A stretch of 64,000 nt of DNA from Saccostrea cucullata (lineage: Eukaryota): the NCBI RefSeq assembly GCF_032062105.1, contig NW_026925910.1:496001-560000 (forward strand), read 5' to 3'. How positions within the stretch are numbered: position 1 is the stretch's first letter; each line of letters opens with the position of its first letter. The position numbers and the translations under genes are program-made. Below are positions 44,301 to 55,195 of this stretch, piece by piece. The notes under the pieces were generated by a model that saw nothing but the letters and a program-made list of their open reading frames with translations, searched no databases and was not told the DNA's origin.

Positions 44301-46925
<2,625 letters not shown>

Positions 46926-47844
46926 TTCTAAAACAAAATGTCACCATTAAATCCCTCGCAAGTCAGAAAAACTTGTGGACAATCAAAATACTTCTACCTT
47001 TCAAGATCAGCGATTTTGTATATATTTATGCTAGGTTTTACTAATCCTCCTTTATTCATTCACCCAACACATTCTAATTTGGTTAGAACTAATAAGGCAC
47101 AATGTTGGATTCAAGGGTTGCAATGATTCCATTTTTAATAAGCTGAAAAAAAATTATGCTTAAAGTCAAGTGAAATATTACAAAATCTTGAACTGAGAAT
47201 CATATATACATGTATTTAATCTGAATTAAGTTCCCCCTCTAAGTTTTTCTTTAATAAAATTTAGATATTTCATGAAAGTTCTGTTTGTCATGTTTAGGGT
47301 CTTGGGGTCTCCACTACCTAGAACTCAACATCCAGTGTGGCAACTTCTACTTTAAAAAATAACTAAGGTGAAGTCCACAGCAAAAAATTTAATTAAATAT
47401 GTTTAGGTAGTTCATATGGGGTCCAGTTAAGATGCATATGGCATGAGTTGAAGCAGGCCTACCCAACCTAAGTTCACCAATAATTTAACAGTTAATCTTC
47501 TATCAACCTTAACGTTTTTAACATTTTCATTGAAATATGCCTATAAGATATGTCAATAATTCAACTAAAATGTATTCTCCTATGCCTCAATACATTTTCA
47601 GTTGACAATTCACAGCTGAGAAAATGCCGGCAAAATGCCGGTAGTAACATGTTCGCTATCTAGGCCCTATCTGAATTACTTACAAACTGATATATATCTA
47701 AATTTTTGATTACTTACTGTCTATTTTAATTTAAGTTCGTTCTTTTCTCGGTTTCCTCCAAACTTCGACTTATATCTTTTCCACCTGTCAAACAGAATGC
47801 CAAATACTTACACGCGTGTACTTTCTTCTTACAGCACTACCAGT

Positions 47845-47995
47845 CGTGTCGAATTTTCATTGGCTACCGTAATGTTCACTATGAAATTTCATTGGATAAA
47901 CTTAACATACTCCCATTCATATCTCAAGGACACGTATAACTTCGACAAACTACGTAAATCAAGAATATCGAGAATTGCCGAGAACAATCGAGAAT
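47845..47995 (-). promoter_or_regulatory. BiP promoter: ERSE-like element, second CCAAT box and HSE-like arrays
   Basis: Minus strand 47863-47845 reads CCAAT-GAAAATTCG-ACACG (ERSE consensus CCAAT-N9-CCACG, one mismatch). Second CCAAT at 47895-47891. nGAAnnTTCn next to both boxes. GAA repeats every 10 bp at 47972, 47982 and 47992. Confidence 0.6.
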
Positions 47996-48850
47996 TTAAA
48001 ATTTCATCAGCAAAAACTGTTTACATATGATTTCAAAGAATCATGTCCAAGTTTCATTACGTAATTGTTATAGCTTATCTAATTTTATTCTACATTAAAA
48101 CTTGTCTTTACTTTCTTAGTTCGTTGTACGTTGTTGATTTCGTATTTAAGTGCAAAATGTTCCAGAAAAATTACTGTGCATCAAGTTTCATTATAATAAT
48201 GAATTATTTTTTGCAATACGTTTGTAAAAAAAAATATTTGTGTGCTTTCTGAAGACTTCATATGAAAATAAAACATGTTTACGTATTTATTCTATAGTAC
48301 GCCTTAATCTAAATAAGCAGTTCGTGACTGCGCATGCCTTCCACACGAACACGTGCTCCATTCCAGGAGCCTCACTCCAGACGGGAAGGGTAGGACGAAG
48401 ATGTATAGATGCAGATATGCATCCTTATCCTTGTCCTGGTGCGTGTAACCGTAAAGTATGTATTCTCTGTACTTTTTTTTTTTTAGGATTTCAATATTTT
48501 AGTTGAATGACAATTGGCCACATACCTTTCTTCGAAAGATGAATAGAGCTAGAAACTTATCAATGCATTTTTGGTAGAGCAGAGTTCTTTTAAATGTGAA
48601 TTGTTGAATATCGGTCCAAACCAATATTTAGACCATATTGATACCCAATAAGGCCTTTTTCAAGTGTTGAAATCTCTTGATTTAGCTATAGATTCAAATG
48701 AGCTTAATTAAAATTGTATACAGTGTTACACAAAAAAAGTCAAATAGACAAAGCCACAAGTAGTAGACAGTAGTTCAGTTGGAAAGAGGAAAAAGAATTC
48801 CAAAGAGATAGTCTAAGCATTGTTGCTTTTGAACATTAAGCAAAACTTTA

Positions 48851-49257
48851 AACAGGTTAGGACCACTCGCCCAAATGGGATATAATAGTCCATTTGGGAT
48901 ATAATATCCCAAATGAGCCTTAAATTTACAGTGCAAAAATTGAAATTAAATTCGCAACAGGACACTTAAAAAGGAATAACTTTTGATTGACAAGTTTTGC
49001 TGTATGCCCATTGTTTAGGAGATTGATCCCTCGGAAGTTCCGCAACTTCTTGTGGATCAATCTAACAAACAGTAGGGTTGCAGAAAAACTTGCTTACCAA
49101 AAGTTATTCCATTTTAAGTGTTTTGATGCGGATTTATGATATTTATTATCAAAATAAAAATTTTCAATTTTTGCACAGTAAATTTATAGCCCATTTGGGA
49201 TATTATATCCCAAACGGACTATTATATCCCATTTGGGCGATTGGTCCCAACCTGTTA
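48851..49257. mobile_element. ~400-bp near-palindromic MITE
   Basis: AACAGGTTAGGACCACTCGCCCAAATGGGATATAATAGTCC... mirrored by ...GGACTATTATATCCCATTTGGGCGATTGGTCCCAACCTGTT over almost its whole length. Confidence 0.85.
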
Positions 49258-49393
49258 AAGATGTATTTCCATTCAGTGAATTGGTAAGTACACAACCTTG
49301 AGTGTGTGTTGAATATAGTGAGTGAGGTAAATCAATATACTCTTATTACATACAGTTTTAATGGTTAATGTTCATGGAAGTAAAAAGACCAGA

Positions 49394-49475
49394 AGAGTGC
49401 AGATGATGAGATCATAGTTCATCAGAAATTAATTGAAGACCACAAAATGTCTTTCGCTTCTAGCTGATGCACTCT
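49394..49475 (+). ncRNA. SNORD80: Box C/D snoRNA SNORD80/snR60/Z15 family (double guide, 28S)
   Basis: 8-bp terminal stem AGAGTGCA/TGCACTCT; C ATGATGA; D' guide CATAGTTCA + CAGA; C' TTGAAGA; D guide GTCTTTCGCTTCTA + CTGA. The guides pair with 28S UGAACUAUG and UAGGGGCGAAAGAC. Confidence 0.9.
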
Positions 49476-50027
49476 AAAATCTGAAAAGGGCATCCCATTT
49501 CACTGACATTACATATTCTGTTTAGAAAGATATATGAATCATTTCAGGGCCCAGTGAATGCAATTGTCATTTGAATTGATGATTGGACAACATTACCAGA
49601 ATTTGAAGAAAGTAGGGTAAGAATGGTATTTCTTTAAAATAAAAAGTGTATTCCAGTGCTTTCCGTAAGAACCGGCCACCGGCCAAATTGACCACTGCAA
49701 ATGACAAAAATGCCATTTTGAAATAAAAATTTATAGTCAGGTCCACAGATTCTGTTCATAAACCTCAGCCCCTAGTTTGTTGCAATTTTTCTCTAGCCCT
49801 TTACTTTGTAATAATGGGAAAACACTGGTAGTCATTTAGAAATTAAAAATTCAAAGCTATTTTTGATGTATCTTGGTATTCTTGATGTATAAAATTGTAA
49901 TAAAAATCATGGTTGAACTTTGTTGAGCCAGTTTTATTTTTGATGAAAAAGTTTGCAAGTTCATTCTCAGAAAGTAATTATTTTGATTTTAAACATGCAG
50001 CATCTGTAGATATAGCATAAATATAAT

Positions 50028-50127
50028 GACAGGTAGTGATGATGAAAGCTTTTTCTCCATTCGCGGTTTCCACCAGAGATTTTTCGATGATGGACCAATC
50101 CTTCCTTGGATGTCTGAACTACCTGTT
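50028..50127 (+). ncRNA. SNORD14: U14 snoRNA copy 1
   Basis: C GTGATGA (50036); domain A CATTCGCGGTTTCCACC (pairs 18S GAAACCGCGAAUG); domain B CCTTCCTTGGATGT + D box CTGA (pairs 18S ACAUCCAAGGAAGG); terminal stem ACAGGTAGT/ACTACCTGT. Confidence 0.95.
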
Positions 50128-50611
50128 GTTAAAATATATATATATATATATTTACCCCTTTTTGATAACATTAACTCTTGTGAAAATAAAATTTATGACA
50201 GTTGGTATCTCTGTTATAAAGTTCATTTTCAAGTTTAAAGGGAACAAAATAGATAATTCGTAATTGCTGTTCTGTTTATAATGTATTTTTTTTAAACGTA
50301 AGGAAAATCTAGCAAATAGGAGGACCAAGATCACTTGTGACAAAATTTCTTTTATGACTTTCTAATGGACTAATTTCAAATATATATGTTTAACTACAAT
50401 ATTAATGTTCCTTACCACCAGAGTTTTGGGGGTTATGTTAGTTTAATAGATAATCTTAATGTTTAATAATTTTCTAATCTTATACTGTAATCATTGCAGT
50501 CTACGCTGAAGTTACCTTCTTCGGTCAGTTTTAATATCGAGTGCCACTGTGGTGGTGTTGGAAGGGAAAGTGGTAAGAATATTCTACCAAAGTGGAAATT
50601 TTTTTAACAGT

Positions 50612-50681
50612 TGTCAAAGGGATGAAAGCTTTACAAATTACTGATTTGTGATGTTTGTATTATTAGCTCTATCTGATTGGC
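50612..50681 (+). ncRNA. SNORD44: Box C/D snoRNA SNORD44-like (18S Am166 equivalent)
   Basis: Variant C GGGATGA; D' CTGA; C' GTGATGT; 11-nt guide TATTAGCTCTA + T + CTGA, complementary to 18S UAGAGCUAAUA; stem GTCAA/TTGGC. Sits in a 185-nt intron (50573-50757). Confidence 0.8.
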
Positions 50682-50857
50682 CTCGATGCAGTATTGTCTG
50701 AAAAGCAAGCAAACTCTTCAGTGCAGTTAATTAATATCGTGTGAAATTATTTTGCAGGAAAAGGAGAAGAAATTATTCAATCTATAAACAAGGTAATTAT
50801 TTGAAAAGTTACAAACCAGGAGAATTATTTCTTGAAGTCAATAACATGATTAAGATT

Positions 50858-50956
50858 TCAGGTAGTGATGATGAAAATTTTTTTCTCCATTCGCGGTTTC
50901 CACCAGAGATTTTTCGATGATGGACCAATCCTTCCTTGGATGTCTGAACTACCTGA
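50858..50956 (+). ncRNA. SNORD14: U14 snoRNA copy 2
   Basis: Near-identical to copy 1; stem TCAGGTAGT/ACTACCTGA. Confidence 0.95.
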
Positions 50957-51987
50957 CTTCAAAATCAAATGGAATTTTTTTTTTTACTAGATTTATAGTT
51001 ATACTATATTAAAATGATCAATAAATGAGTCTGATATAGTGTCAATATATAGCCAGCCATTTAACAGATACAGTAAAAGTTATAACGAAGTCACTGGGAC
51101 CTATTAAATTACTTCCCTATATCCATGAATTTGCAATGTCCGTGTTCGCACTAACCGAGTTTTACTGTACCCATATTCAAACTTGTATATGAAAAATAAT
51201 CAATTGATCTGGTTTGAAAAATAAGCAAGGAATACAACATTTTAAAGGGAATGAAACAAATCCTTTCCAATTTAACCTAACAGTGAAAAAATTTTGATTT
51301 AGGCATATCATCGGCACACTTAATTATTATCGTACCTTATAAACGATTGCATAATACTTTTTCTTTGCACTATATAACCCATAACCAGCATTGTTTCGCA
51401 TAGTAATTTACAAAGGATTTATATACGTAAAAAAAACAATTAAAAAAATTAAGATAAGACAGGCTAAATAGCTGGGTATGTGAAACATTTTGACAGAAAA
51501 TTCAAACACAGTTGAGTAAATAGTTCTTCCGTCGTTCCGACTGTCCTCGATTTCTTTTTTTTTCATCGAGCATGTTCATGATGTTGGTATCTTTATTATC
51601 GATGCACAGAGTTTCTTGGACTCATTTTCGAGGCAAAATGTAATTCCCAAATGCATTAATGTTTTTAAAAAATTACGTTTACTATGCAGAATTATCATTC
51701 ATTGTTACCTGCTAAAAGTGATGAAATCTAGTATTGTTATAAATATATATAAATTTTAAATTGTTTTATTAAGTAATGTGTACTTAAGAAAATAAATATA
51801 ATTTTACACTTAAGATTAAAAATAAACAAAATAATTCTTCTGCCGGAAATATCTGAAAAAGTTTTCCACAGCTCTGCCTGAACCCATTTTAGTCTACTCA
51901 TTCTTCATAACTGTTCCATTTGATCTTGAATGTATTGTTACAGTATTAATAATGCACTGAATGATTAAAAATCTTATTGTACTAATA

Positions 51988-52061
51988 AATGAATGATGAA
52001 AAATCTTGTGGGAATCTCTCTGACAATACAATGAAGAGATCAATACAAGTATCTGACACTT
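51988..52061 (+). ncRNA. SNORD79: Box C/D snoRNA SNORD79-like (28S guide)
   Basis: C ATGATGA (51993); D' guide GTGGGAATCTC + T + CTGA, complementary to 28S GAGAUUCCCAC; C' ATGAAGA; D CTGA (52053); 82 nt upstream of the acceptor tattgcag. Confidence 0.85.
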
Positions 52062-52186
52062 GAAACTTCTAGTATATAATAATCAGATGTCTATTCTGTT
52101 TCTTTTGCTCATCAATTTGTATGTACATTGTATTGCAGGTTTCGGATAGAATAATGTAAATACTCACCAAAAGAATAAGGACTTGG

Positions 52187-52992
52187 GCCATCCTTAAAAA
52201 ATTTATTTTTTGCGGTAACACGCCTCATCATTTTAGATGTGAGTAGGTAGGTAGGCTTTTTTTTTTTGAGACAAAATGTCAGAAATAAATTTCGATTATA
52301 TAGAGGTATTAAGTATGTCTTAGATTTCACCTTACTAATCAAACAAGAAAATTAAAGCATTCTAAATGAATTCAATCTTTTATTGCTCAAATATCGGAAC
52401 ACATCAGTTCTCTTTAGGCAAACTTTTTCAAAGAAAGTGACTCTCATCAGCCACGTACCTCAAATAACTGACTCCACACTAATCTAGTGTTTCGGGGGTG
52501 TGATATATATGAGGTTTAAGATTTTGATAGTTTATTAATTAGCTGCAAATTCATCATCCCACATGGAACTGTTGCCACCAATTTGATATTTTAAACATCA
52601 TACCATGTATCTGTAAGGTGGAACTGACGCACGATATTTTGGACTAGCAATTAAGATGTTTTTCCTTTCAAATTCACTGTAACTGACAGAACTATAGAGT
52701 CAATATTTCCCGCAACCTTCGCCTACGCCATCTCTAAATTTGTAGATCACAAAAACATTTTAATAGTACTTGGGGAAAGATAAAGCGTCGGTGTAACCGA
52801 GGCGTAAAAAAAATATATCAATCGGATAAAAACGGCATAAGTGCAATGGAGACGTAAAAAAATATTAATCGGATAAAAACGGAAAATGGATACATAAAAA
52901 AAAAAAGATTTTTGAACAGATAAAAAAAAAATCCAGTCGGGTGGTTTTGGACAGAATAATGTAAAAACTCACCAAAAGAATAAGGATGGCCT
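52187..52992. mobile_element. Non-autonomous DNA transposon inside the snoRNA host gene
   Basis: GGCCATCCTTA ... TAAGGATGGCC termini. The right-end sequence agaataatgtaaa..ctcaccaaaagaataagg is duplicated at ~52149-52180. Confidence 0.6.
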
Positions 52993-53193
52993 TGGCTGCT
53001 AGCTATTTACACAAAAGGTACTGGTACATTTTTTCCACATGTTGACATGAAAGGTAGAAAAAAACGAATTTATGAAATTTCAAAATAACAATTGCAACTA
53101 CGTAATATCTAGGTCGTGTAAATTATCATGAAGTCATTGCTGTCTAAAATTGGTACTATAAAGTTGAATGGAATAACCCAATGAAAAGCTTGT

Positions 53194-53289
53194 AAGGCAG
53201 TGATGATGAAAGTTTTTTCTCCATTCGCGGTTTCCACCAGAGATCCGTCGGTGATGGACCAATCCTTCCTTGGATGTCTGAACTGCCTT
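53194..53289 (+). ncRNA. SNORD14: U14 snoRNA copy 3
   Basis: Domains A and B are identical to copies 1-2. The terminal stem AAGGCAGT/ACTGCCTT shows a compensatory T-A to C-G change. Confidence 0.95.
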
Positions 53290-53982
53290 CTAAAATGATC
53301 ATAACTTTTAAAACAAAATAGTGAAATAATTTGCATTTCAAGCATGTTTGAGTAGGTCAATCGTATTTTTTCAGAACTGAAAAACCTTTCAAAATGTACT
53401 GAAAGAAATCAATTTTATGCTTCAATGCTGTAGAGTACAAACAAGCAAGATATTTACAATTTGGAACAAGACAATAAAATACTTCTACAGATCACTTAAA
53501 GTTCTAAGTTAAGAATATCATACTTCCAATTCTTAGTTTTAAGGAATCTGAGAAAAAAAATGAGAAATGTGTATCTGAAATAAAATTGGTGGTAAAGATG
53601 AGTTTAATTTATACATATTAGCTTAAGTGATGTTAGGATGGTAGTAAACCTTGATCAATTTTTCTTAACTAATATTTTGGTCAATACAATCATGATTGTC
53701 AGCTTAGTAGAAATGTGTTGTACTAGAAGAATTTAAAAGTCACTAGAAAGTGGATAATTGATGTTGCATTTCAACCAATAATAATAATATAGTCAGCTAA
53801 TCATAAAACATGACCTCATCTATATGTTTTTCAAATGACGATCAGTTACTTATTAGAGTTGAAAGCTGTGTAAGAGTGCATTACACTAAATGTTCAGCAC
53901 TATAGGGTTTATTCAGACATGCAAGTTCCATAAATACAAGTCTTAAGGTAGGAAATTATGAAAAGTGAAAGATTTTGTGTAA

Positions 53983-54042
53983 AGTAAATGATGATTAGAA
54001 CTTTCAGAATTCCTGAAGAGTTATCTGCGGATATCTGATACT
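53983..54042 (+). ncRNA. Compact box C/D snoRNA, family unassigned (probable 28S guide)
   Basis: Stem AGTA/TACT; C ATGATGA; D' CAGA; C' CTGAAGA; guide CTGCGGATAT + CTGA, complementary to conserved 28S AUAUCCGCAG. Confidence 0.7.
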
Positions 54043-54550
54043 GGACACAAAATGCTAGTCAATTGAAAACTGCTTTACCAATACTATATAGATGGATAGC
54101 TACTCTTGATTTAAAAACTTTAATTCAGTTTAATATCTACCTCATACTCATTCAAACTACCATAAAATATCTTGACAGCAATTTTGACTATTTTGTAGTC
54201 TTATTCAGTTGTTGTATGTGTCAGGGTATAGCTCATTGAAACCAAATTATGCCAAATAAGCCTTTAGATAACATTCTGACTAAGTCCATATCAGTCCTTG
54301 TTGAAATAGACATGTATTTAGGGGAGATTATGAAAATGGCACTAAGGTCTGATCATTGTAAACTTGATTATTTGAAGTGAAAAGATTTTGCAAAGATGAA
54401 GGATCATTGTAAGAAATTATTAGGACATTTTTCTAGCAAGCATGAATAACATTTTAACCAAAGTTGTAAAACTATAGGATGATCCAAGAATTTTTCATTG
54501 TAATATTAATTGTTAAAAAGATGAAAAATCATATGTATAAGATCTGGAGC

Positions 54551-54625
54551 TGCACAGTACATGATGAATTTGAACTCTCTCACTGATATTGGTGAGGACA
54601 ACATAATATCTGATCAAACTGTGCA
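54551..54625 (+). ncRNA. SNORD81: Box C/D snoRNA SNORD81-like (28S 5' region guide)
   Basis: 8-bp stem TGCACAGT/ACTGTGCA; C ATGATGA; guide TTGAACTCTCTC + A + CTGA (pairs 28S GAGAGAGUUCAA); C' GTGAGGA; AATATCTGA D box as in vertebrate U81. Confidence 0.9.
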
Positions 54626-55112
54626 TTAATCACATATCTGTAAAATAGTCGGAAAATCAAGATTACTGGCCTTTTCTTTATGAAAATCTCAAAATGTCAA
54701 ATTAGCAATGCAAATGATTGAGACTGCCTGTCTTACAACAAATAAGTTTACTTAAGGTAAAGCATCTAGAAACAGTAGGAGGATTAGAAGCTACATGTAT
54801 TTAAGGAAAAAATTCAAAAATTAAGTTTACAAAGACAGATTCTTTGTAATATGTCGATATTTTCAGTATTGGTAGTATTCAAAATTTACCAGACACTTAT
54901 GTATTAAAATATCCTCTCTTCGACTGAAAAAAAAGGTTTTTTAAATAAAGAAAATGTGTTACATTTGTTGTATTGGAAATGAATTGCGCACAACTTAGGA
55001 AATTGATAGTATGTCAAAGTAAATATTCATGTGTATTTTCCCAGTGTAAAGACAAGAGAATAGCCATGAATGCTTTACAAAATTTAAAATATTTTGTAGG
55101 AATTAAATGGAT

Positions 55113-55195
55113 GGCCTGCAATGATGAAAAGAAGATTAAAATGTAGAAAGGGACATATGAATCTCTGTGATATTCTCTTCTTTCTGAGACAGGCT
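55113..55195 (+). ncRNA. Box C/D snoRNA, SNORD74-like (possibly degenerate)
   Basis: Stem GGCCTG/CAGGCT; C ATGATGA; GTAGAAAGGGACA + T + ATGA (D'), one mismatch to the expected 28S UGUCCCUAUCUAC; D CTGA. Confidence 0.55.

What the first reader, a model, noticed from the sequence alone, without database searches (positions are those of the whole stretch)
47718..48460. BiP and the snoRNA host are head-to-head across a stress-element-rich promoter
Seen: the presumed HSPA5 first exon (~47718-47800) and the host's first donor (~48456) are only ~650 bp apart. Between them lie an ERSE-like CCAAT-N9-ACACG, a second CCAAT, nGAAnnTTCn units abutting both CCAAT boxes, a 10-bp-periodic GAA array (47971-47995) and an NRF1-like TGCGCATGCC (~48329). 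Known: ERSE is the ATF6/NF-Y site of BiP promoters, and vertebrate U14 is heat-responsive through its Hsp70-family host HSPA8. Inference: U14 and rRNA-methylation guides may again be tied to an Hsp70-family gene, here through a shared promoter instead of intron hosting, linking UPR/heat stress to ribosome biogenesis.
Basis: partly seen in the sequence, partly recalled or inferred. Interest (0 to 1): 0.8.

Follow-up and report, generated by a model that had tools for sequence, protein, structure and literature searches.

The report
BiP beside a divergent snoRNA host
In this mollusc the ER chaperone gene BiP lies back-to-back with a non-coding gene that carries U14 and other rRNA-modification guide RNAs, a pairing seen in two other molluscan-type lineages; only BiP's ER-stress element is conserved, and nothing yet shows that the two genes share one stress-driven promoter.

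Summary
The sequence features are all present at or near the stated coordinates. RNA reads fix the BiP 5'UTR intron (46928-47717) and show that exon 1 runs from 47718 to at least 47834.

The CCAAT-N9-ACACG element (47863-47845, BiP sense) is a real ERSE-type module. A sense-oriented CCAAT-N9-NCACG sits upstream of BiP in all seven other lineages sampled. It is a perfect CCACG in two of them. Five loci, including the window, also share a second CCAAT and an ACGCGTGT box.

A snoRNA cluster (snR60/Z15, SNORD79-like, U14) lies divergent to BiP in two other lineages as well. It is absent within about 7-10 kb in four others.

The stress-coupling idea is not supported:
- The GAAnnTTC units and the TTCTCG array are absent from every other lineage.
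- There is no canonical three-unit HSE.
- The intervening DNA is AT-rich and unconserved.
- The host start seems to have its own GC-rich island with a TGCGCATG motif.
- The host's first exon got no read support. This is weak negative evidence, because the runs differ from the window by about 3-6%.

U14 also sits in the last intron of HSC70 in this genome, so the link is "in addition to" intron hosting, not "instead of" it. Verdict: a real, conserved gene pair with BiP-only ER-stress wiring shown. Modest interest.

The parts
44301..45062 (-). BiP last coding exon, ending ...EKDEL plus stop
   Evidence: ORF and HSP70 Pfam match, E 3e-77
46789..46927 (-). BiP exon 2, with ATG at 46925 and the signal peptide
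   Evidence: RNA contig piece and splice joints; ORF
46928..47717 (-). BiP 5'UTR intron, 790 nt, GT..AG on the minus strand
   Evidence: Joint 46927->47718 in four runs
47718..47834 (-). BiP non-coding exon 1. 47834 is a lower bound for the 5' end.
   Evidence: Contig of depth 384 ends at 47834 followed by adapter; read depth falls towards that end. Exon 1 is conserved in L019 and L020.
47810..47817 (-). ACGCGTGT box just inside the transcript start; function unknown
   Evidence: ACGCGTGT in the window, L010, L017 and L018; shifted variant CGCGTGTG in L016 (alignment A3)
47845..47863 (-). ERSE-type element CCAAT-GAAAATTCG-ACACG (proximal CCAAT)
   Evidence: Unique in the window. Conserved in position and orientation upstream of BiP in L010, L015, L016, L017/18, L022 and L023.
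47883..47895 (-). Distal CCAAT box with adjoining GAAATTTC
   Evidence: The distal CCAAT, 25-28 nt upstream of the proximal one, is conserved in A3; the GAAnnTTC is not.
47963..47994 (-). TTCTCG x3 plus TTCTTG array at 10/10/9-bp spacing (step-type-HSE-like); specific to this lineage
   Evidence: unique in the genome. Absent from the other loci.
47996..48310 (.). AT-rich, unconserved spacer between the two core promoter regions
   Evidence: GC 0.18-0.32; no similarity to any other locus
48329..48338 (+). TGCGCATGCC, an NRF1-like half palindrome at the putative host promoter
   Evidence: TGCGCATG in host sense also lies in the BiP-host intergenic DNA of L010 and L017/18.
48338..48456 (+). Putative host exon 1: GC-rich island, pyrimidine-rich start CCTTCC, candidate donors at 48439 and 48457. 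Inferred only.
   Evidence: GC peak. No read support.
48853..49257 (.). MITE-like insertion with terminal inverted repeats, inside the host's 5' part
   Evidence: Sequence read; internal repeats
49394..49475 (+). snR60/Z15 (SNORD77/80 clan) C/D snoRNA
   Evidence: Rfam 58.8 bits, above the gathering score
49548..49616 (+). Candidate host exon, with GTAAGA donor at 49617
   Evidence: An RNA contig of depth 20.6 joins about 49614 to about 50505, consistent with a GT-AG intron at 49617-50499
50034..50121 (+). U14 copy 1
   Evidence: Rfam 64.0 bits
50500..50574 (+). Candidate host exon downstream of U14 copy 1
   Evidence: Same contig joint; AG acceptor at 50498-50499 and GTAAGA donor at 50575
50863..50951 (+). 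U14 copy 2
   Evidence: Rfam 65.7 bits
51985..52063 (+). SNORD79-like snoRNA
   Evidence: Rfam 32.3 bits, below the cut-off. Its guide 15-mer at 52009-52023 is identical to that of the L010 and L017 SNORD79 genes.
53198..53285 (+). U14 copy 3
   Evidence: Rfam 63.7 bits
54553..54623 (+). SNORD81-like snoRNA (weak match)
   Evidence: Rfam 34.4 bits, E 0.002
55121..55187 (+). Further C/D box candidate with a 7-bp terminal stem
   Evidence: Own C/D box scan

Best explanation
Two neighbouring but separate core promoters face away from each other.

(1) The BiP promoter is a compact, TATA-less module bound, by inference, by NF-Y and ATF6. It consists of a distal CCAAT, about 27 nt of spacer, a proximal CCAAT-N9-ACACG (ERSE type), and then the transcript start with an ACGCGTGT box. 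By analogy with vertebrate GRP78, it gives basal and ER-stress-induced transcription of BiP.

(2) About 0.5 kb away, a small GC-rich island with a TGCGCATG motif and a pyrimidine-rich start most likely launches a GAS5-like non-coding host on the other strand. Its introns release snR60/Z15, three U14 copies, and SNORD79- and SNORD81-like guides.

The gene pair is an old piece of microsynteny, kept in at least three lineages. The DNA between the two cores is free to vary in length and sequence. The GAAnnTTC units and the TTCTCG array belong to this lineage only and are not shown to be stress elements.

Shown: the BiP gene model and intron, ERSE conservation, the snoRNAs, and conservation of the pairing.
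Inferred: factor binding, the host start site, and any co-regulation.
For: - BiP exon 1/2 joint and 5' end.
- ERSE-type site unique in the window.
- A single sense-oriented CCAAT-N9-NCACG 0.85-2.5 kb upstream of the BiP ATG in L010, L015 (Pinctada imbricata), L016, L017/18 and L022 (Potamilus), and just upstream of the BiP coding exons in L023, where the ATG was not located.
- Aligned double-CCAAT / ERSE / ACGCGTGT / GGCA module (A3).
- snoRNAs on the strand opposite BiP in the window, in L010 and in L017/L018, with the snR60 -> SNORD79 order shared and guide sequences shared.
- No ORF of 90 aa or more along the host.
- One RNA contig joint consistent with a GT-AG intron around U14 copy 1.
- GC island at 48310-48430.
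- TGCGCATG in host sense in the intergenic DNA of three lineages.
- No similarity in the DNA between the two cores.
Against: - The host start is not mapped. There is zero read depth over 47882-48669 in four RNA runs, although those runs are 3-6% diverged and only reads at >=95% identity were laid.
- The ERSE's ATF6 half-site is ACACG, not CCACG.
- The element ends only 11 nt upstream of the mapped 5' end, closer than in vertebrate GRP78 promoters.
- TGCGCATG is only an 8-mer and occurs about once per 20 kb in unrelated parts of several loci.
- No snoRNA cluster lies within about 7-10 kb upstream of BiP in Pinctada, Potamilus, L016 or L023.
Confidence: 0.6

Rival explanations
1. One reading: one bidirectional, stress-responsive promoter. 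ERSE and HSE-like elements drive both BiP and the snoRNA host, coupling UPR or heat stress to the supply of U14 and methylation guides.
For: - The starts are probably less than 1 kb apart on opposite strands.
- The pairing is conserved in three lineages, which is typical of pairs under shared regulatory constraint.
- In L017 the TGCGCATG site is only 212 bp from the ERSE.
- A human snoRNA host that lies head-to-head with a coding gene (ZFAS1) does rise under ER stress (PMC13238724).
Against: - No canonical three-unit HSE lies within 3 kb.
- The GAAnnTTC units and the TTCTCG array are absent from all other lineages, including Pinctada.
- The host side has its own GC island and motif.
- Spacing varies five-fold and the spacer is unconserved.
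- The same ZFAS1 paper states that host and neighbour are co-expressed although independently regulated, and that intronic snoRNA levels are uncorrelated with host levels.
Confidence: 0.15
2. The host starts elsewhere, for example at or beyond 48779-49285 near the MITE. The GC-rich patch at 48310-48450 is then unrelated, and BiP and the host are merely neighbours without paired promoters.
For: - No reads over 48276-48472 in any run.
- The first faint + side coverage begins in the 48670-48866 bin.
- The candidate donor GTAAGT at 49286 lies just past the MITE.
Against: - The runs are from a diverged source, and non-coding exons may fall under the 95% identity cut.
- The GC island is the only one between BiP and the first snoRNA.
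- It carries the motif shared with L010 and L017.
- snR60/Z15 at 49394 needs an upstream exon and donor.
Confidence: 0.2

Closest known systems
Vertebrate GRP78/HSPA5 promoter with ERSE-I (CCAAT-N9-CCACG; NF-Y plus ATF6)
   Same: A CCAAT box, an exact 9-nt spacer and an NCACG half-site, in sense orientation just upstream of the BiP start. More than one CCAAT box is present. The consensus is as stated in PMC5890977.
   Different: There is a single ERSE rather than several. The half-site is ACACG here and in Pinctada, GCACG in three lineages, and CCACG in two. The spacer is AT-rich. No TATA lies between the element and the start. The element ends about 11 nt from the mapped 5' end.
U14 (SNORD14) in introns of vertebrate hsc70/HSPA8
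   Same: This genome also carries U14 in an intron (the last one) of two HSC70 loci. U14 in hsc70 introns of human, mouse and rat is cited from PMC7277114.
   Different: Three further, sequence-distinct U14 copies (A1) lie in a non-coding host next to a different Hsp70-family gene, BiP. They are outside that gene and on the opposite strand.
Human GAS5 (non-coding, 5'TOP, multi-snoRNA host)
   Same: A non-coding gene with many short exons whose introns carry C/D snoRNAs from the families GAS5 hosts. SNORD77/80-clan, SNORD79-like and SNORD81-like are in the window; SNORD47 is in L017. GAS5's own content is from my own knowledge.
   Different: It also hosts U14, and a SNORD24-like gene in L010 and L017. 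Its neighbour is BiP. A TOP start is not shown. Orthology of the host transcript itself cannot be tested.
ZFAS1/ZNFX1-type head-to-head pairs of a snoRNA host lncRNA and a coding gene
   Same: A non-coding snoRNA host abuts a protein-coding gene head-to-head (PMC13238724).
   Different: The partner here is a stress chaperone with an ERSE, and the pairing is conserved among distant molluscan-type lineages.

Membership tests
ERSE-I (CCAAT-N9-CCACG) | CCAAT box followed by exactly 9 nt | tested here: met
   47863-47845 (-): CCAAT GAAAATTCG ACACG
ERSE-I (CCAAT-N9-CCACG) | CCACG half-site (ATF6 side) | tested here: not met
   ACACG, a 4/5 match. The equivalent site is ACACG in Pinctada, GCACG in L010, L016 and L017, and CCACG in L022 and L023.
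ERSE-I (CCAAT-N9-CCACG) | Sits in the proximal promoter of an ER chaperone gene and is conserved there | tested here: met
   11-29 nt upstream of the mapped BiP 5' end. There is one sense-oriented copy upstream of BiP in every locus examined; Potamilus L022 also has an antisense match about 6 kb further upstream.
ERSE-I (CCAAT-N9-CCACG) | NF-Y/ATF6 binding and induction by ER stress | not testable with these tools
   Needs a reporter, ChIP or stress RNA-seq
Heat shock element (HSF site) | At least three contiguous inverted nGAAn units | tested here: not met
   No GAAnnTTCnnGAA or TTCnnGAAnnTTC within 3 kb upstream; only two 2-unit sites
Heat shock element (HSF site) | Step-type variant nTTCn(5)nTTCn(5)nTTCn | tested here: inconclusive
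   The pattern is met at 47994-47972. It is unique in the genome and absent from all other lineages. That metazoan HSF1 uses such sites poorly is from my own knowledge.
Bidirectional promoter (opposite-strand starts under 1 kb apart) | Two mapped start sites under 1 kb apart on opposite strands | tested here: inconclusive
   The BiP 5' end is at or above 47834. The host start is only inferred, at about 48340.
Bidirectional promoter (opposite-strand starts under 1 kb apart) | Co-regulation through shared elements | not tested
GAS5-like non-coding snoRNA host | Several C/D snoRNAs, one per intron, on one strand | tested here: met
   Seven to eight snoRNAs on the + strand from 49394 to 55187, with candidate short exons between them
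GAS5-like non-coding snoRNA host | No protein-coding capacity | tested here: met
   No ORF of 90 aa or more between 48500 and 57400
GAS5-like non-coding snoRNA host | Spliced, polyadenylated transcript with a 5'TOP start | tested here: inconclusive
   One contig joint is consistent with a GT-AG splice. Oligo-dT runs gave almost no coverage. The start is not mapped.
NRF1 site (YGCGCAYGCGCR) | Full palindromic 12-mer | tested here: not met
   Only TGCGCATGCC is present; the second GCGC half is missing

The most novel reading that the evidence does not exclude
BiP and a GAS5-like, U14-bearing snoRNA host form an ancient, selectively maintained divergent unit in molluscs, in which the ERSE module also sets host transcription. 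U14, which here also sits in the HSC70 intron, would then be tied twice to Hsp70-family promoters, coupling chaperone demand to 18S rRNA processing and modification.
Probability: 0.12. Interest if true: 0.7.

Novelty: new member of a known kind. Interest (0 to 1): 0.4.

Why it matters
Two results have value.

- It gives a cleanly delimited, conserved invertebrate BiP core promoter: double CCAAT, an ERSE-type site and an ACGCGTGT box. This suits UPR reporter work in bivalves and shows that the ATF6-side half-site tolerates A, G or C at its first position.
- It shows that U14's link to an Hsp70-family gene predates vertebrates, because U14 sits in the HSC70 intron of a mollusc. It also shows that a second set of U14 copies lies in a host next to BiP in more than one lineage.

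If the pair were truly co-regulated, it would connect ER stress to the supply of ribosome-biogenesis guides. As it stands, this is a conserved neighbour relationship without a shown mechanism.

Tried and rejected
- Laying reads from three raw oligo-dT runs and one metatranscriptome. This fixed the BiP model, but the runs are 3-6% diverged, so the empty host exon 1 is uninformative.
- Reaching closer relatives for promoter conservation. Contigs L014, L019 and L020 (95-96% aa) stop at or before exon 1. A 27-kb contig of a 96% relative came back without DNA.
- Searching with the accidental ORF that spans the promoter found nothing. Two exact-pattern scans of metagenome contigs also found nothing.
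- A 30-letter loose end of an RNA contig seemed to match 48779-48817, but it scores no better than background. Dropped.
- A haplotig or second copy of the promoter in the genome: none found.
- The second BiP-like gene (74% aa, C23106) has no ERSE-like site or exon-2-like sequence within 4 kb upstream.
- A TATA-like GATATAAG at 47778-47771 was rejected as the BiP TATA box, because transcripts extend upstream of it.
- Literature searches found no report of a BiP/snoRNA-host pair or of a molluscan ERSE in the held library. That library lacks most subscription journals.
- The joined, spliced BiP protein was not assembled or searched.

Full report
**What is in the window.**
The minus strand carries a BiP/GRP78 gene.
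- Its exon ORFs give HSP70 Pfam matches (E 3e-77 and 3e-72).
- The last exon ends in KDEL at 44301. The ATG is at 46925, followed by a signal peptide.

The plus strand downstream of 48460 carries C/D snoRNAs (Rfam):
- snR60/Z15 at 49394-49475 (58.8 bits).
- Three U14 copies at 50034-50121, 50863-50951 and 53198-53285 (64.0, 65.7 and 63.7 bits).
- Weaker SNORD79-like (51985-52063) and SNORD81-like (54553-54623) matches.
- A further C/D candidate at 55121-55187, from my own box scan.

No ORF of 90 aa or more lies along this stretch. It therefore looks like a non-coding, GAS5-type multi-snoRNA host, as another note on this window also says (s1-721894).

**BiP gene model from RNA.**
- All four runs show the joint 46927->47718, with CT..AC on the plus strand, which is GT..AG for BiP. 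Support is 42, 31 and 23 independent read starts, plus a contig of depth 384.
- That contig runs on to 47834 and is then followed by adapter letters. Read depth also falls towards that end. Exon 1 is at least 47718-47834, and the start lies at or slightly upstream of 47834.
- The TATA-like GATATAAG at 47778-47771 is therefore inside the transcript and is not the TATA box.
- The runs differ from the window at 8 of 139 positions in coding exon 2, so they come from a diverged strain or species.

**The motifs.** All are present as described.

| Motif | Place (strand) | Chance check |
|---|---|---|
| CCAAT-GAAAATTCG-ACACG | 47863-47845 (-) | only match in 64 kb; 0.13 expected |
| Second CCAAT | 47895-47891 (-) | both boxes read CCAATGAAAWTTC |
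| TTCTCG x3 plus TTCTTG, spacing 10/10/9 | 47994-47963 (-) | never seen in shuffles; only match in the 1.17-Gb genome |
| TGCGCATGCC | 48329-48338 (+) | one other TGCGCATG in the window |

**Conservation.**
I searched the BiP exon ORFs one by one and fetched genomic loci from other lineages:
- L010/11/12, L016, L017/18 and L023, all unnamed ENA assemblies.
- L015, Pinctada imbricata.
- L022, Potamilus streckersoni.

Every one has a sense-oriented CCAAT-N9-NCACG upstream of BiP. It lies 0.85-2.5 kb upstream of the ATG where the ATG was located; in L023 the ATG was not located. It is the only sense-oriented copy in each roughly 20-kb locus; Potamilus has a second match on the opposite strand. 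The half-site varies:
- ACACG in Pinctada, as in the window.
- GCACG in L010, L016 and L017.
- A perfect CCACG in Potamilus and L023.

An alignment (A3) shows a shared module:
- a distal CCAAT,
- 25-28 nt of spacer,
- the ERSE-type site,
- about 20 nt further on, an ACGCGTGT box,
- then GGCA.

This is strong comparative evidence that the element is a real part of the BiP promoter. The ERSE definition and the NF-Y/ATF6 roles are taken from PMC5890977.

By contrast, none of the other lineages has GAAnnTTC next to its CCAAT boxes. They read CCAATCA..., and both forms fit the NF-Y flank preference CCAAT[C/G][A/G] (own knowledge). None has a TTC array. No locus, the window included, has a canonical three-unit HSE within 3 kb. 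Closer relatives could not be reached. The heat-shock reading is therefore unsupported rather than disproved at short evolutionary range.

**The pairing.**
- In L010, SNORD24-like, snR60/Z15 and SNORD79 genes lie upstream of BiP on the opposite strand.
- In L017 and L018 the set is SNORD24-like, two snR60/Z15, SNORD79, SNORD47 and U14.
- The snR60 -> SNORD79 order matches the window, and the SNORD79 guide 15-mer is identical.

The BiP/host head-to-head arrangement is therefore conserved in three lineages that share no alignable non-coding DNA. Pinctada, Potamilus, L016 and L023 show no snoRNA within about 7-10 kb upstream.

**The host start.**
- No read at >=95% identity falls on 47882-48669, so exon 1 (about 48338-48456) and its donor remain inferred.
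- In its favour, the only GC-rich island between BiP and the first snoRNA is here: 0.48-0.58 against 0.2-0.3 around it.
- TGCGCATG lies at its upstream edge, followed by CCTTCC. The same 8-mer in host sense lies in the BiP-host intergenic DNA of L010 (1.1 kb from the ERSE) and of L017/18 (212 bp). An 8-mer is weak evidence, since it also occurs elsewhere in some loci.
- Further downstream, one metatranscriptome contig joins about 49614 to about 50505. This fits a GT-AG intron at 49617-50499 that contains U14 copy 1.
- A MITE-like insertion occupies 48853-49257.

**U14 and Hsp70 genes.**
The genome has two more U14 genes. Each lies in the last intron of an HSC70 gene that ends in IEEVD, on contigs C12882 and C13148. 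They differ from the BiP-side copies in the central part and the terminal stem (A1).

The vertebrate hsc70/U14 arrangement (PMC7277114) therefore exists here too. The BiP-side copies are an addition to it, not a replacement.

**Reading.**
The best-supported picture is two separate core promoters in divergent orientation, about 0.5 kb apart, held together as old microsynteny. The ERSE module serves BiP. Whether it also acts on the host is open.

A human precedent is ZFAS1/ZNFX1. That snoRNA host is head-to-head with a coding gene and is raised by ER stress, yet is described as independently regulated, with snoRNA levels uncoupled from the host (PMC13238724). This shows the idea is possible but also that proximity alone proves little.

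**Limits.**
- The organisms behind L010, L016, L017 and L023 are unnamed.
- No expression comparison was possible.

Noticed in passing
G000:C12882:11617-11711 (+) and G000:C13148:270241-270335 (-); L008:4618-4712, L009:4942-5036: U14 lies in the last intron of two HSC70 (IEEVD-ending) loci, which may be paralogues or haplotigs. The vertebrate hsc70/U14 arrangement is therefore present in this mollusc.
   Followed up: partly
window 47810-47817 (-): An ACGCGTGT box about 20-27 nt downstream of the ERSE, at the very start of the BiP transcript. It is present in the window, L010, L017 and L018, with a shifted variant in L016. Its function is unknown.
   Followed up: partly
window 48853-49257: A MITE-like element with roughly 25-nt terminal inverted repeats, inserted in the 5' part of the host. 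RNA contigs that map here probably come from other copies.
   Followed up: no
G000:C23106:44089-46589 (L030:4089-6587): A second, divergent BiP-like gene (74% aa identity in the last exon). It has no ERSE-like site and no recognisable exon 2 within 4 kb upstream.
   Followed up: partly
window 52138-52181 and 52943-52986: Two 44-nt near-identical candidate host exons (93% identity). With the three U14 copies, they point to tandem duplication of exon-plus-snoRNA units inside the host.
   Followed up: no
window 51079-51126 and 51801-51841: Short stretches with high RNA depth but loose ends on both sides, with variable continuations. These are most likely fragments of dispersed repeats, not host exons.
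   Followed up: no
L016 versus L017/L018 (same ENA sample ERZ26696912): One sample holds BiP loci both with and without the divergent snoRNA cluster. All have the same core promoter. These may be paralogues or different organisms.
   Followed up: no
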